Of a DNA stretch of 64,000 nt, positions 57,801 through 64,000 are shown in pieces; the stretch's first letter is position 1, and each line of letters begins with the position of its first letter. The translations under genes and the position numbers were made by a program. The DNA lies in contig DF236976.1 of assembly GCA_000708835.1 (NCBI GenBank), forward strand, positions 186,001 through 250,000, in the 5' to 3' direction. Below the pieces are notes generated by a model. The model was given only the letters and a program-made list of their open reading frames with translations. It did not search any database and was not told where the DNA came from. This stretch comes from Klebsormidium nitens (taxonomy: Eukaryota; Plantae; Klebsormidiophyceae).

Positions 57801-58416
57801 TTTTTGATTCAACCGGGCCCCAAGGCTCCTCGATCAGGGAAAGTATTCAGACCGGTCAAAGTACGCCGAAAGCGCTGCTCAGCGACTGCAGAATCTTGGG
57901 ATTCAGTCCTTTCACCTCAAGATCCACGTTGGTGCAAAAGCAGTTGCTTGGTCCGCCGCCTGTGCGTCTCCGTGATGCAGGAAAGAAGAAAACGTGCAAT
58001 GCTGAGGGGACGAGAGCCTTCCTGCCGCTATTCTGCATGAAAGCCCGAGAGCTCGACATCCGTTGAAAAGGTTTTGCTGCAGTGAAAAGGCCACTCTTGG
58101 TAGTTGTGTTTCATGTTTGTATCCGGCGCACCTGTGTTCCGTCAAAACACTGGGAGTAGAGCTGCAAAGCGTGTGACAGTCTGCAGCAGGAAGCGAGCTG
58201 AGCGGTTAAGTCTTTGAATGCTCAAGGACTCCCTTCCACATTGTTGCGCTGCCTGTATTTGTGGACGAGTAAAGTTTTAGGGGGTAAACTCCTTCGGCAC
58301 AGAGAAACTTACAGCAGCAGCGCCTAGATTTCTGCAAGGTCCTTTGAGGTTGGGAGGTCCTGACAGACAGGTAGAAAGGGCTCTCGCCGAGCCCTTGTCT
58401 TCTGGTGCCAGAGCTT

Positions 58417-61400
58417 ATGGCAGCTGCCGGGATGGCTAGATGTTTGCAGGCGCTTGATGTTCTGCAGGAACTGCAACCCTTCACACATAGCCGCAGTGCA
58501 GGAGCCGCGGCTTGCTCATATAGTCCAAGCTCGCCAAACCTCTCAAAACCGGTGCGGTTTGCATGCAATGCCAACCTTGATAGAAAGCACAGCAGGCCGG
58601 CGTTTCTGGCCGGAGGCCTGCCCATCCCTTCGCCCCACCGAAACAAACACCGCTTCCTGTTGCACTCAAAGAACGGCGGTCGGACAGCATATGCAGAGAA
58701 ACCGGAGAAGAAGGTGCCGTCAGTTTTGTCAGCAGCCAGTGATTTGAATGACCGGGAGCGGGGGAAGAAAGGGGCAGGCAATGAAAAGAGCGCAGCTGCA
58801 GATGAGGATGCAGACGGGGCTGCGTTGGCAAGCGGGGGAGCACTTGCTGGGGTGCTCTTGGTGGTCACCCTGGCGACGATGGCAGGACTAGGCTTTGTAT
58901 TTAAAGACCAGATAAATGCGGCGCTCATCCAATTTCAGGGGATACTCGAGAGTAAGTGTCCCAGTTTTTGAAGTTTCAATTTTTTCTTTTTTACTGTGAA
59001 CACCTGGTACGCTTGCGGTTGTTAAGACCGATTGAAGCAGGTCAAATCCAACATATTTAGGCCACTGGTAGTGCCCTGTGGCATCCCCGTGTAATCATGT
59101 AAGCATAGGCCAAAAACTGTTGTTGAGCAACGGAAAGTCGTAGGCCCCAGCGTTCTTTCTAGAAAGTTTGGCGTTGAACAACTTGTTTCATTGCACAAAA
59201 GAACTTGCAGTTGCAGGGATTTAGATCTCACCTTTTGCCCGGGCTTTGTGCCGTTTCTGGTGTTATACTTTCTCCGGGCTTGTTTGTCATCCTGTGCCAG
59301 TGCATGTTGAATCACTATTGGAATTCTGGTCTCACTGCTTGCTTAACAATTCAGTTACTAGTTACAATTCCAGTTTTCTAGTCACCATCTCACAATATTT
59401 TACATAGACACAGGGAGATTGCCATCGACTCTTTGGTTAATAGATGCATTGCTGCAAACCTCTTTGTTGAGTCTCAGATGTTCTATTTCAAGAAATGTTT
59501 TGGCACCTTGGTGAGGCTGGTGCGCGTGAAGTGCAAGCTTGAATGACCCTTCTGATCCACACAACTGGCTAAAACAAATCTGAAGCTTCTGGAATGCTGT
59601 TCTGAAATTACTTATTGAGTTGGCCCCCCTTCATGTATTTGAATTAATACCACAAGGCTTCGTCTGGCAGATCTATGCAGAGACCTCCTTGCTGCTTGCC
59701 AATGACTGATTGCCACCTGTCCCGCATGCAGCCCTCGGGCCGTCCGCTTACGTCATCTTTGTGTTTGCATATGCGGGCCTGGAGGTGAGGCCTTAGCATT
59801 GAGATGGCCTTTAAGCGACACATCAACATTTCTCCACTGGATTTGAGTATTGATCACACCCTCCCTCTTTTTTGCAGCACTAGGCCCCATAGGATATGTG
59901 TATTTTCTCCTAGCTTACGCAGGATTAGAGGTGAGCACTTGTCATAGCCGCACATACCCACCACTCAGGGCAGAATGTTGCAACCATCACCAAACAATGT
60001 CTCTTGCACCTGCAGCACACTCAAATCAGGCACACTCGAGTCATGCACTTCCGACCATCAGTCTATACATGCTCTGTCACATGTAACCTGATTCCCTGAC
60101 TTCAATGCAAATGTTTGCGGCTGGGCCGATTGCATTTCAAGAAGGTTTAAGAAGGTTTTAAGTCGGCTTGGGGTACAATCAAGATATTGCCCTGCACAGC
60201 AAGTTCCAATCAGTTGGTCCTAATATGAGGTTGCACCTGTCAAAAGTAAAGTGGCAAGGGGCAACAGATCAAGTGCTAAATTTGAACCTCAGAGCATTGC
60301 AACATAAAACGCCAATTCTGTTATGATGACCAGAACACAAAGGCAATCAAGGACGTCGCCACTGGTCTCTTGGGGCGGTTGTCACCGGCCGCTAAACTTG
60401 TGTGCGCGTGAAAGGAGCATCTATCACCTGACTCTGCACGCTTGCTTTCACTTACTTCGCTTAACCCATGGTTTGTGTTGACGTTTCTACAGGTCCTCGC
60501 AATCCCTGCTATCCCCCTAACCATGTCGGCAGGGCTCCTCTTCGGACAGGCTACGGGAACAGTCATTGTCAGTGCGGCTGGCACGGTAAGTCCCGATTGA
60601 AGACGTTTTTCTTGAGTTTTTTTATCATCATTTATCATCTCTTCCTTTGCTCTATTTTCCCTCGTCCTTTCCTTTCCCTGTTCTACAATGTTCCGCTCTT
60701 CGTGGAGGCATCGAGTACAGAACACAGGAGAATGAAAGCAAAGCTGTGGATTGAGTGCTTTTTGGCATTGGCAGTCCTCTCTACTTTTCTTCTGCTGGTC
60801 AAGATCCGTCGGACAGAACAATCAGGGTCTGTCGAAAAAGTCCCTCTGTTTCGTGGGACAATCTGTTCTCCGAAGAAACATCAAAATGCTGTTTCAATAA
60901 TCCGTGTGGCAGGATCCACACAGTCGAAAGTCGAGACCATCACCAGAATGAGTACTCAAGACGTAGACTACAAGAACAACTCTCTCTTGTCTTTCTCCCC
61001 AGCTCGCAGCCACCGTCTCCTTCCTGATTGCGCGCTACCTGGCGCGGGACCGCATCCTAAAAATCGCTGAGAAGAACCCCAAGTTTTTGGCGATTGACAA
61101 GGCCATTGGCAAGGAGAGCTTTAAGGTCGTCACTCTGCTGCGGTTGAGCCCACTGCTGCCTTTCTCTGTCGGCAACTACCTCTACGGCCTCACCTCCGTC
61201 AAGCTCGTGCCGTACGTCTTGGCCAGGTATGTTTTCACCGCTTCGGGCTTTTCAGGACTGTGGGGTTTTCAAGATCTAAGCTCGGGTTCACTTTTTTCTG
61301 CTCGTGACATGGTCCGGATATGGTGAAGGGAGGAAAGAGGTTCAGCTGTTTGCTCGTGACATAAGCCGGATATGGTGAAGGAAGGAAAGGACAAATAGTA

Positions 61401-62755
61401 AGAGTCTGTTGGCCCGCGTCTTGGCAAGGTCAGCGCGTGGCGGCTGGCTTGTGTTGCGCACTAGTGCACCTCCCTGGCCATCTCCTCGTAGAAGACGAGA
61501 TCTTGTTAATATCGATCCGGGAGTTCTCGAGTGCAAGTGGAAACTTCAGGAGGTGACACTAGCTCAAAGTGCAAGGACGTCAAGCGCTGTGCCCCTGGTT
61601 GCCATTACTTGGTAATAACGAGGGAGGTTTGTAAAGGTACGATGGAGGAAGCTTTAACCCTCTGGCCTAGTTCGATCACCCCGAAAAGCGGGTCTGGATG
61701 TGCATCAAACGGCGACTTTCTGTGCAATTGCAAAACTGACCCACCCTCTCCCTTGTGTAGTTGGATCGGCATGCTCCCTGGCACGTTCGCATACGTCAGC
61801 GCAGGCAGCGTTGGCAAGACTCTCCTGGTGAGACGCAACACGCGTGTCTTTCTTTATTACTCTTACGTGCGACATCCAACTTGCAGTGATTGAGTTCGCG
61901 GATTATTCACTTGGACGTTTGTACTTGATTCTCTTTCACATTTGCAAACCTTGTGTCGTCCTGGCCTCGATCTCGTGTCATGTGCCCCGCCTGTAAACAT
62001 CCGTTGCCCAAGCGGCAGAGTTATGCACTGGACTGGGTGGCGCTACGTCGATTGATCGGTCTAGTCAACGGAGATGCCTACACTCGTCCTTTTTGATGTG
62101 GTCATGCCTAACCAGGATACTCATTAGTTTTGACAAGCGTTCCTGTTGCACCCAAAGCTTGGTGCCGCGAACGCGGTTACTTCACTTGAGCCGCTTGAGG
62201 ATTTTGTCAGCGAGCCCTCAGCAATAAGTAAGCCTTGAGCCGTGCCAGCTGACTGATCCCCGTCGCTGTGTGTTGCAGCAAGATTCTGCCGACGGCATCG
62301 TTGGGAATGGCCCATCCGGGCAGATGCAGTTGATAACCCTGGGTTTGGGCCTGCTAGCCACGGTGGGAGCGACGTGGTATGTGGGCAAGTTGGCTAAGGT
62401 ACGTGGATACGTCTTTCTTTGCCGGCACAAAAATCAAGGCTGTGCTTTTGAGCCCTGCCGCCGTGCGTCTAGAAATGGAAGCACCGGGCAGTAACCTGGG
62501 TCTTTCAGAGGGACGACAGTGGTTTGCGCTTCTGTTTCAATGATCTGCCCTAGCGCTCGCTTTTGGATCTTCAGGAAATGCTGACGCGTTGGTCATATGC
62601 TCTTTGGGGATTCATATCGTCACATAAAAGTGCTCTGCACTTGGAGCGATTGGCAGGTTAAGGGTTGACTGCAAACCTTACGGAAAGTTCATTCGGTCTG
62701 ATTCTGACGGATTACTGCTCGTTATCTGCAGACTGCGGTCGATGACATTGAGTAG
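58417..62755 (+). CDS. TVP38/TMEM64 family (VTT/DedA, SNARE-associated Golgi protein domain) membrane protein with plastid-type N-terminal extension
   Basis: Exons 58417-58951, [59732-59784 or 59878-59930], ~60492-60586 (VLAIPAIPLTMSAGLLFG), ~61002-61226 (VSFLIARYLAR...AIDKAIGKESFKVVTLLRLSPLLPFSVGNYLYGLTSV), ~61761-61828 (WIGMLPGTFAYV), ~62279-62398 and 62732-62755 (TAG). Confidence 0.93.
59732..59930 (+). other. Tandem duplicated, mutually exclusive exon pair (2 x 53 nt)
   Basis: Exon A 59732-59784 (cag|...|gtgagg; TLGPSAYVIFVFAYAGLE) and exon B 59878-59930 (cag|...|gtgagc; TLGPIGYVYFLLAYAGLE) have the same length and phases. Including both would shift the frame. Confidence 0.8.
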
Positions 62756-64000
62756 TGAGGCGGGACTAGCACTGTACAGAGGAGTGAAGTTATTCTAGAG
62801 GAATCCCGTTTTTGCGACTACGGTACTCCACCAGTCCATGCAAGCAAGCGTGGCCAGCTTTGATTTTGATTCTATTGTTTGGGTCTAGCGGCGAACGGCA
62901 AACAGCTTTGTCACGATCAGGTAGGAAGAGTTGGACGCGTTGTCAGGGCAGTGTTGCAGGTTAAAAACCAATTATTGCATCATGCAGCACTGTACTTCAT
63001 TATGTATCGTCGAATTGAAGAACTTGTGCCTACTTTCTCTGTTAAGTTCGAGCACCACGTCATCATTAACTGCGTACGTCTAACCTAGCTAAAGATCAGG
63101 TATCGTGCTGACGCATGCACTGTTCGGGCTTGCGTGTCGGACGGCTTGAGCTCTGATCGGACGTTGGCCTAACCAAGAAGGATGAGTTTTTGGGAGACTG
63201 CATACAGCTGTCGTGATTAACTACCTAAGGTGTTGCAGTGCCGTGTAGAGTATATTGCGACGTGCCGTCACTGCATATGGGACTCCTGCCAGGGCAACTC
63301 GAGTCAAATATATATATAGCCGATCCAAAAGAATGGTGATCACCTTGGCTGCACATGATTTGCGTGCACACGTGGACGATTTTCACGCACGTGATGATCT
63401 TGCCACATGGCATCAATGAACGATGTGCGTGCGTGCAATTAGTACCCAGGTATCTAGCTACACGCGATCGGGGGCAACGGCCCCCGCAGGCTGCAAATGG
63501 TGAATGCCCTTCTACATATAATAGTGCGACTGAGGCATGGGCGCGAGCTCACGCCGGGCCCATGTGCTGCAAGTTGAGTGCACGCTCAAGAATCATGTGC
63601 AAGCTGTCGGACGGATCGATTCCCGTTTCATCGATCGCAACAACAGTGGCTGCTTTTGGACCATGTAACACATTACGTGCCCTTGCGGCGGCAAACGCCG
63701 AGTATGCTGCACTCAGTGGTGCAGCTGCCATGCTCGCCAGTGACTGGCAATTAAGACCATTGCACTAGCGGCAGATCTACAGCCTTCGCCTAGAAGCTTG
63801 CACTGCAAATGATCGAACCCTTCCATAAGGTACAAGCGCATGACTGTCGGTCGTGATTGCTCAATCTTACCAGTGTACTTTTTGATCATCGATTGAGACG
63901 GTCGGGTCTTCACCGCATTTGAAGTGGATGCTCGACTAAGAAATTTGGGATTATAAAGAGCTTCCCCGTTGACAATAGCGAAAGCACTGAAGACCAAGTC

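What the first reader, a model, noticed from the sequence alone, without database searches (positions are those of the whole stretch)
59732..59930. Mutually exclusive exon pair in the TVP38/TMEM64 (VTT) gene
Seen: two homologous 53-nt exons 93 nt apart, each with a canonical acceptor and a GTGAG donor and identical phases, encoding LGPSAYVIFVFAYAGLE versus LGPIGYVYFLLAYAGLE. The nucleotide sequences are strongly diverged while the peptide pattern and frame are kept, implying both are selected. Because 53 is not a multiple of 3, including both or neither breaks the frame. Established: tandem mutually exclusive exons are common in animals but rarely reported in plants and algae. Inference: two isoforms differ only in the hydrophobic segment entering the VTT/DedA domain, which could tune lipid-scramblase activity or localisation.
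Basis: partly seen in the sequence, partly recalled or inferred. Interest (0 to 1): 0.72.

Follow-up and report, generated by a model that had tools for sequence, protein, structure and literature searches.

The report
Either-or twin exons in algal chloroplast membrane gene
A green alga's gene for a chloroplast-type membrane protein (TVP38/DedA family) holds two twin 53-base exons; each finished RNA keeps exactly one, related algae have kept both, and the preferred one flips between data sets, a kind of switch seldom documented outside animals.

Summary
Confirmed. Exon A (59732-59784) and exon B (59878-59930) are homologous 53-nt exons with AG/GT sites and the same phase. They sit in a seven-exon TVP38/TMEM64 (VTT/DedA) gene.

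- **RNA use in this alga:** spliced RNA contigs from four studies show e1>A>e3 or e1>B>e3, and never both or neither. A dominates in one study (about 265 against 10 in k-mer depth). B dominates in the other three.
- **Conservation:** three related genomic loci (two lineages) keep both exons with intact splice sites. A spliced transcript from a further lineage carries a B-type exon.
- **Both isoforms in a second species:** two environmental transcript contigs carry A and B respectively.
- **Selection:** both exons are under protein-level selection and extra nucleotide-level constraint. Third-position changes are 6/34 in A+B against 83/182 in the constitutive exons.
- **Age:** plant-type orthologues, some by their neighbours from land plants, have a single exon here, so the duplication looks confined to these Klebsormidium-type lineages.
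- **What the exon encodes:** by my mapping, the first helix of re-entrant loop 1.
- **Off-frame stops:** exon B carries four conserved TAGs in the double-inclusion frame. They persist even where the amino acid changed.
- **RNA structure:** no RNA-structure mechanism is statistically supported.

The scan has noted the same kind of exon pair in other genes of this genome, but not in this gene. I found no paper reporting it.

The parts
58417..58951 (+). Exon 1 from the ATG. It encodes a Ser/Ala/Arg-rich N-terminus (transit-peptide-like by composition), one TM helix and an amphipathic linker. The donor is GTAAGT.
   Evidence: RNA contigs end or join exactly at 58951.
59703..59731 (+). Conserved end of intron 1: a branch-site-like TGACTGA and a C-rich tract before the exon A acceptor.
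   Evidence: Alignment with L001-L003. This is one of the few intronic stretches conserved across the lineages.
59732..59784 (+). Exon A, 53 nt, encoding (T)LGPSAYVIFVFAYAGLE.
   Evidence: Joints 58951>59732 and 59784>60493. Conserved in L001, L002 and L003. Present in spliced transcript L065/P0124 of a relative.
59775..59793 (+). Candidate 6-bp hairpin (GGGCCU / AGGCCU) with the exon A donor in its 7-nt loop.
   Evidence: Predicted in window, L001 and L002. Its energy is no better than shuffles (z 0.0 to 0.6), so it is a candidate only.
59785..59877 (+). Intron between A and B: 93 nt here, 107 nt in the relatives. It holds a conserved block ACACAyCAmC (59818-59827) and a branch-site-like GAGyATTGAyCA (59846-59856), then a T-rich tract.
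59878..59930 (+). Exon B, 53 nt, encoding (T)LGPIGYVYFLLAYAGLE. It has four TAGs in the A+B reading frame, at 59881-83, 59890-92, 59911-13 and 59926-28.
   Evidence: Joints 58951>59878 and 59930>60493. Conserved in L001-L003 and L066. Present in spliced transcripts L014 and L066. TAG statistics.
60493..60585 (+). Exon 3, VLAIPAIPLTMSAGLLFG...: the turn and second helix of re-entrant loop 1.
   Evidence: The IP turn appears in the model.
61003..61226 (+). Exon 4, the core of the VTT domain.
   Evidence: Pfam PF09335 at 47.2 bits against a cut-off of 33.9. Joints.
61761..61827 (+). Exon 5.
62279..62398 (+). Exon 6.
62732..62755 (+). Exon 7 coding part, ending in TAG. The 3' UTR runs on to at least 62900.

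Best explanation
This is a genuine, evolutionarily maintained pair of tandem-duplicated mutually exclusive exons in a chloroplast-type TVP38/TMEM64 (DedA superfamily) gene.

Shown:
- Each mature mRNA carries exon A or exon B.
- The dominant choice is A in one study and B in three others.
- Both exons and their splice sites are kept in related Klebsormidium-type algae, and both isoforms are made in a second species.
- Plant-type orthologues have one exon at this position.

Inferred:
- The exon encodes the first helix of re-entrant loop 1. The A/B differences lie at positions 4, 5, 8, 10 and 11, and four of the five fall within a 120-degree arc of a helical wheel. The invariant face (G2, Y6, F9, Y13, L16, E17) is untouched. 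The switch would therefore retune a lipid- or partner-facing surface and leave the core intact.
- Exclusivity is enforced at least by the reading frame. A+B stops at codon 2 of B, and skipping both stops in exon 4, so both aberrant forms should be cleared by nonsense-mediated decay.
- The four conserved UAGs in B either secure that stop or act as UAG(G)-type silencer motifs through which a trans factor flips the choice. B has the stronger T-rich acceptor and looks like the default.

The confidence given is for the core claim: a real, conserved, mutually exclusive pair with both isoforms made. The mechanistic inferences are much less certain, at about 0.3.
For: RNA in the window's organism:
- X1: e1>A and A>e3 at depth 264.8; e1>B at 9.59; unspliced at 5.3. 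These sum to 279.7, against 280.1 for exon 1.
- X5, X11 and X15: e1>B>e3 at 130.5, 68.6 and 39.2. X5 also has a minor A>e3 contig at 6.39.
- No A>B joint and no e1>e3 joint in any run. No sequence differences between runs.

Conservation:
- L001, L002 and L003 hold both exons with AG/GT intact.
- Between window and L002, A has 0 nonsynonymous and 5 synonymous changes; B has 3 conservative replacements.
- Third-position differences: A+B 6/34 against 83/182 in constitutive exons, window vs L002 (binomial 6e-4, Fisher 0.002); 4/34 against 37/120 vs L001; B 2/17 against 81/175 vs L066 (Fisher 0.0085).

Second species:
- L014 is e1>B>e3 and L065/P0124 is e1>A>e3. Both are about 99% identical to genomic L003.

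Single exon elsewhere:
- L004, L005-7, L008/9, L011/12 and L013.

Off-frame TAGs:
- All 4 of the 4 possible NTA|G sites are used in B. The probability under the gene's own codon usage is 1.2e-4.
- All four are kept in five sequences. At two sites the amino acid changed but the TAG stayed (CTA>ATA in L002, ATA>TTA in L066).

Topology:
- Helix 199-216, a break at I217-P218, then helix 219-230, with local pLDDT 73-82.
- This matches re-entrant loop 1 of Okawa et al..
- Conservation of the face is shown.
Against: - All RNA evidence comes from assembled contigs, not raw reads. Contigs drop rare variants, so low-level A+B or skipped forms, and exact isoform ratios, are not established.
- The run identities are coded, so the condition behind the A/B flip is unknown.
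- There is no protein-level evidence for either isoform and no functional assay.
- The roles proposed for the UAGs and for the donor hairpins are inference. The folding energies are not better than controls.
- The AF2 model is poor overall (mean pLDDT 53.9, pTM 0.29).
- Chloroplast targeting and orthology to AT1G22850 were not tested directly.
Confidence: 0.9

Rival explanations
1. [quoted passage not shown]
For: Exon B uses rare NTA codons and has GC3 of 0.35 against 0.66 for the gene. In each run, one form is a small minority.
Against: Each exon is the dominant form in at least one study. Both are intact and under purifying selection in the three related genomic loci, and L066 adds a B-type exon. 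Both are found in mature transcripts of a second species.
Confidence: 0.03
2. Exclusivity and choice are set by RNA secondary structure, either competing docking and selector pairings or a duplex between exon A and exon B, as in insect exon clusters.
For: RNAalifold draws 25 pairs between A and B that cover the B donor. Substitutions fall mostly outside those pairs. Both exons have a reduced synonymous rate. Small conserved hairpins enclose each donor.
Against: The A:B duplex energy is not better than synonymous recodings: z is -0.3 to -2.6, and 379 of 1000 recoded B sequences pair as well in the window. The donor hairpins have z of 0.0 to 0.6. The introns are otherwise unalignable, with no conserved long complementary blocks. 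Only one pair changes on both sides, and it sits in a 3-bp helix.
Confidence: 0.15
3. Exclusivity comes from steric hindrance, because the A-B intron is too short to be removed.
For: The A-B intron is 93-107 nt, far shorter than the gene's other introns of 333-780 nt.
Against: The conserved branch-site-like element lies about 24 nt before the B acceptor. That leaves roughly 65-80 nt from donor to branch point, above the usual limit (established knowledge). A plant-type orthologue splices a 97-nt intron at the neighbouring position. The minimum intron length for this alga was not measured.
Confidence: 0.12
4. The A/B flip between studies reflects different strains or cis variants, not physiological regulation.
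For: Only one of four studies shows A dominance, and the metadata are hidden.
Against: None of the four runs shows a base difference or indel over the covered parts of the 4.6-kb gene. X1 covers 30/30 bins and X5 covers 26/30. A trans-acting strain difference cannot be excluded.
Confidence: 0.12

Closest known systems
Tandem-duplicated mutually exclusive exon pairs of animals, for example pyruvate kinase M exons 9/10 and ATE1 exons 7a/7b (PMC7797038)
   Same: Adjacent homologous exons of equal length and phase. Exactly one is included. The length is not a multiple of three, so double inclusion or skipping gives a premature stop. Both copies are conserved, and synonymous change is reduced.
   Different: The lineage is a streptophyte alga and the gene family is different. 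No supported docking/selector RNA structure was found. Exon B carries four conserved off-frame UAGs.
Other mutually exclusive exon pairs noted by this scan in the same genome (DTC carrier, MUT9-like kinase, LUC7, P4H, GSH1 and others)
   Same: Same organism and the same architecture of twin exons. Follow-up notes report either-or use in RNA, and in some cases conservation in related algae (AI notes, not rechecked here).
   Different: This is a different gene. Here a near-complete flip of the dominant isoform between studies is seen, and both isoforms are recovered from environmental transcripts of a second species.
Arabidopsis TVPFP (AT1G22850), a chloroplast Tvp38/DedA protein (bioRxiv 10.64898/2026.10.13.758368; PMC3836016)
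   Same: A long N-terminal extension followed by TM helices and a VTT domain. Named plant proteins of this family are the nearest full-length hits. The plant-type loci share the 53-nt exon 2 with its phase, followed by exons 3 and 4.
   Different: Plant-type orthologues have one exon 2 (consensus YGPAGYALFVAVYAGLE) and no A/B alternative. Direct orthology to AT1G22850 and plastid targeting were not tested here.
DedA superfamily re-entrant loop 1 (TMEM41B, VMP1, bacterial DedA; Okawa et al., bioRxiv 10.1101/2020.12.18.423352)
   Same: A helix, proline turn, helix hairpin just before the classical VTT domain. Conserved aromatic and Leu positions sit on one face of the first helix.
   Different: In those proteins the loop is fixed. 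Here its first helix comes in two spliced versions.

Membership tests
Mutually exclusive tandem homologous exons | Adjacent exons that are homologous, of equal length and in the same phase | tested here: met
   53 and 53 nt, both phase 1, 12/17 amino acids identical.
Mutually exclusive tandem homologous exons | Both exons are used, and exactly one per mature transcript | tested here: met
   All four joints are seen and no A>B or e1>e3 joint appears in four runs. L014 and L065 each carry one exon. Contigs cannot exclude rare aberrant forms.
Mutually exclusive tandem homologous exons | Both copies maintained by selection in relatives | tested here: met
   Three related genomic loci have both copies with intact splice sites and few or conservative replacements; transcript L066 adds a B-type exon.
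Mutually exclusive tandem homologous exons | Regulated choice (by condition or tissue) | tested here: inconclusive
   The dominant isoform is A in study P1 and B in P2, P5 and P6. The conditions are unknown because the run ids are coded.
Competing-RNA-structure (docking/selector) exon clusters | Conserved complementary elements with covariation or significant stability | tested here: not met
   The energies lie within the null distributions and no conserved long complementary intronic blocks were found.
TVP38/TMEM64 (VTT domain, PF09335; DedA superfamily) | Pfam VTT_dom match above the gathering score | tested here: met
   Exon 4 alone scores 47.2 bits against a cut-off of 33.9. All homologues carry PF09335.
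TVP38/TMEM64 (VTT domain, PF09335; DedA superfamily) | Re-entrant loop 1 (helix, Pro turn, helix) preceding the VTT domain | tested here: inconclusive
   The model shows helix 199-216, a break at IP, then helix 219-230 with local pLDDT 73-82, but the global pTM is 0.29. The motif mapping to TMEM41B is my own.
TVP38/TMEM64 (VTT domain, PF09335; DedA superfamily) | Lipid scrambling or transport activity | not testable with these tools
   Needs a biochemical assay.
Chloroplast TVPFP / AT1G22850 orthologue group | Plastid transit peptide and one-to-one orthology | not tested
   The evidence is the N-terminal composition only, and nearest full-length hits named 'TVP38/TMEM64 slr0305-like' or 'SNARE associated Golgi protein family' in many plants.

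The most novel reading that the evidence does not exclude
Exon B has evolved and kept four UAG triplets that are held more tightly than the amino acids they overlap. They would work as a built-in safeguard, giving an immediate stop if A and B are both included, and as a silencer code through which a repressor flips the gene to exon A under a particular condition. Together with the many other pairs noted in this genome, this would mean that Klebsormidium-type algae use animal-style mutually exclusive splicing as a regular way to diversify proteins. In this gene, that would tune the lipid-handling loop of a chloroplast envelope/thylakoid contact protein.
Probability: 0.25. Interest if true: 0.78.

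Novelty: new member of a known kind. Interest (0 to 1): 0.62.

Why it matters
Functional mutually exclusive exons are textbook in animals but are hardly documented in the green lineage. This case has RNA support from four studies and conservation in related algae. Both isoforms appear in a second species, and the dominant form flips almost completely between data sets.

The affected gene belongs to the chloroplast Tvp38/DedA group. That group was recently tied to envelope-thylakoid contacts and vesicles in Arabidopsis (bioRxiv 10.64898/2026.10.13.758368). The alternative segment is the first helix of the re-entrant loop thought to form the substrate site. The pair is therefore a natural two-allele experiment on what that loop does, and a handle on how exon choice is regulated in a close algal relative of land plants.

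Tried and rejected
- **A:B inter-exon duplex.** RNAalifold proposed it. I rejected it as unsupported because synonymous recodings pair about as well.
It is present only in the window. L001 has a partial version and L002/L003 have none.
- **Local donor hairpins.** They are conserved in form, but their energy z-scores are 0.0 to 0.6. I keep them only as candidates.
- **Steric block.** It is unlikely given the position of the branch site.
- **Solved structures.** A PDB sequence search with exon 4 gave no hit.
- **Structure prediction.** The AF2 model of the natural B-isoform transcript is poor overall (pLDDT 53.9), so I ran no fold search and used only the local secondary structure.
- **Look-ups that gave nothing usable.** P0023 returned no DNA. 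L010 is cut inside exon 2, so it is uninformative.
- **Literature.** No paper combines mutually exclusive exons with Klebsormidium in a relevant way.
- **Earlier scan notes.** There is no note on this gene.
- **Joined model.** I sent no joined model of the window's exons to any search or fold tool. Exons were concatenated only inside local scripts, to check the frame and count codon differences. For full-length work I used the natural spliced transcripts L014 and P0124/L065.

Full report
**Observation.**
- Exon A is 59732-59784 and exon B is 59878-59930, each 53 nt.
- Each follows an AG and is followed by GTGAG. Each is entered in phase 1, after one base carried over from exon 1 (58417-58951).
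- They encode (T)LGPSAYVIFVFAYAGLE and (T)LGPIGYVYFLLAYAGLE.
- Nucleotide identity is 29/53. By codon position it is 12/17, 15/18 and 2/18, so silent sites are saturated while the peptide is kept.
- Including both exons gives a stop at the second codon of B. Including neither shifts the frame and gives a stop in exon 4.
- In six-frame translations of the whole 64-kb window, no other 17-mer is at least 9/17 identical to either peptide.

**The gene.**
- With either exon the model has seven exons, all with GT..AG introns, ending at the TAG at 62753-62755.
- Exon 4 alone matches Pfam VTT_dom at 47.2 bits against a cut-off of 33.9.
- The nearest full-length proteins are named 'TVP38/TMEM64 family membrane protein slr0305-like' or 'SNARE associated Golgi protein family' in many plants.
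- This is the family of Arabidopsis AT1G22850. That protein was discussed as a chloroplast Tvp38 homologue in PMC3836016. It was recently characterised as TVPFP, with a transit peptide, five TM helices and a VTT domain, acting at envelope-thylakoid contacts.
- I did not test orthology to AT1G22850 or plastid targeting directly.

**RNA evidence in the window's organism.**
One run from each of four studies was laid on 58300-62900. All are Logan contigs. Their spliced joints show that they derive from RNA.

| Run | Dominant path | Depth | Minor forms |
|---|---|---|---|
| X1 | e1>A>e3 | 264.8 | e1>B at 9.59, with the downstream intron still retained; unspliced at 5.3 |
| X5 | e1>B>e3 | 130.5 | contig joining A to e3, with the upstream intron retained, at 6.39 |
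| X11 | e1>B>e3 | 68.6 | none seen |
| X15 | e1>B>e3 | 39.2 | none seen |

- In X1 the three depths sum to 279.7, against 280.1 for exon 1.
- No run shows an A>B joint or an e1>e3 joint.
- No base difference or indel separates the runs.
- So both exons are used, one per transcript as far as contigs can show, and the dominant isoform flips between studies.
- Contigs drop rare variants and the run identities are coded. Exact ratios and the condition behind the flip therefore remain open.

**Relatives with both exons.**
- A word search with exon 1 led to three genomic contigs. L001 is 91% identical in exon 1. L002 and L003 are about 50% identical to the window and are close to each other.
- All three hold both exons with AG and GT intact, 107 nt apart.
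- Between window and L002, exon A has five synonymous and no replacement changes. Exon B has three conservative replacements.
- The introns are unalignable apart from the splice-site neighbourhoods, one mid-intron block and a branch-site-like element.
- Both alternative exons also change less at silent sites than the constitutive exons of the same gene:

| Comparison | Alternative exons (third-position differences) | Constitutive exons | Test |
|---|---|---|---|
| window vs L002 | A+B 6/34 | 83/182 | binomial 6e-4, Fisher 0.002 |
| window vs L001 | A+B 4/34 | 37/120 | binomial 0.009 |
| window vs L066 | B 2/17 | 81/175 | Fisher 0.0085 |

- Reduced silent change is a recognised hallmark of regulated alternative exons.

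**Both isoforms in a second species.**
- A scan of metagenome contigs with exon 4 returned L014. This is a 1756-nt spliced transcript, 99.5% identical to genomic L003, that joins e1 to B to e3.
- I used its natural full-length ORF (L014:381-1547, 389 aa) as the query for the last word search. That returned P0124.
- The contig of P0124, L065, is a spliced transcript of the same species that joins e1 to A to e3.
- A further lineage (L066/P0125) has constitutive exons only 77-81% identical at the nucleotide level. It carries a B-type exon that is 92.7% identical to the window's B.

**Relatives with one exon.**
- Five other lineages have a single 53-nt exon 2 in the same phase, followed by exons 3 and 4. 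They are L004, L005-7, L008/9, L011/12 and L013.
- L005-7 have PPR and AP2 genes as neighbours, which points to land plants.
- For L004, L005 and L008 I also ran a lower-threshold scan. It found no second copy at 7/17 or better within 3 kb upstream or before exon 3.
- The duplication therefore looks confined to the Klebsormidium-type lineages sampled. It predates their split, in line with the saturated silent sites between A and B.
- In 41 non-Klebsormidium orthologues the consensus is YGPAGYALFVAVYAGLE. Gly5 is invariant there. B keeps it and A has Ala.

**What the segment is.**
- Okawa et al. define the DedA domain as re-entrant loop 1 plus the classical VTT domain. The loop turns at a conserved proline, and conserved aromatic and leucine residues of the first half contact the second half.
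- The model of the natural B-isoform transcript is poor overall (pLDDT 53.9, pTM 0.29). Locally it is fair (73-82) and shows helix 199-216, a break at I217-P218, then helix 219-230.
- The exon-2 peptide is residues 197-213. It therefore encodes essentially the whole first helix of that hairpin. This mapping is my inference.
- On a helical wheel, six of the seven residues invariant in all 44 sequences (G2, Y6, F9, Y13, L16, E17) fall between 60 and 160 degrees; the seventh, G15, lies at 320 degrees. Four of the five A/B differences (positions 4, 5, 8, 11) fall between 280 and 40 degrees (arithmetic).
- The switch thus swaps one face of the helix and leaves the conserved face alone.

**How exclusivity and choice may work.**
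- Shown: the frame makes A+B and skip-both transcripts carry early stops.
- Exon B has a TAG at all four places where the peptide allows one in the A+B frame, through the rare codons CTA, ATA, CTA and TTA, each followed by G. The probability under the gene's own codon usage is 1.2e-4.
- All four TAGs are kept in five sequences. At two sites the amino acid changed while the TAG stayed (CTA>ATA in L002/L003, ATA>TTA in L066).
- I read this as selection on the UAGs themselves. They could act as fail-safe stops or as UAG(G)-type silencer motifs. This is inference.
- Exon B has the stronger T-rich acceptor and is the majority form in three of four studies. It looks like the default, with A requiring activation or B requiring repression.
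- Structure-based mechanisms were tested and are not supported. Steric hindrance is unlikely given the branch-site position.

**Comparison and novelty.**
- The architecture is that of animal tandem mutually exclusive exons.
- I found no paper reporting such exons in Klebsormidium.
- The scan's earlier notes describe the same kind of pair in other genes of this genome. They name the genome Klebsormidium nitens, which I did not verify.
- I class this as a new, well-supported member of a known kind. Its unusual extra feature is the conserved off-frame UAGs.

**Limits.**
- Both read tools were used once, as allowed.

Noticed in passing
window 59818-59827: A 10-nt block (ACACAyCAmC) in the middle of the A-B intron is conserved across the three related genomic loci, although the rest of the intron is unalignable. 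It may be a splicing regulatory element. It has no supported pairing partner.
   Followed up: partly
window 59913-59918 and 59931-59936: Exon B contains GCUUAC, which resembles the 5' end of U1 snRNA and can pair with exon B's own donor GUGAGC. Both hexamers are invariant in the relatives, but the fold energy is not better than shuffles.
   Followed up: partly
window 59446-59782 and 59878-60238: The minor contigs are splicing intermediates of opposite order. A is joined to e3 with the upstream intron still present (X5). e1 is joined to B with the downstream intron still present (X1). This may hint that the order of intron removal differs between the two paths.
   Followed up: no
window 61299-61400: The exon 4-5 intron holds a tandem direct repeat of about 55 nt (gctcgtgaca..ggatatggtgaagg..aggaaag, twice), seen when reading the sequence.
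   Followed up: no
L002 and L003 versus L014 and L065: Transcripts of a Klebsormidium-type alga turn up in JGI environmental data sets (Ga0315919, Ga0326789), with genomic DNA of a close relative in another (3300060284). Environmental data can therefore serve to check algal splice isoforms.
   Followed up: partly
one search hit list: No protein of the window's own species appeared among the full-length hits. The public annotation status of this gene, and which isoform is annotated if any, could therefore not be established.
   Followed up: no
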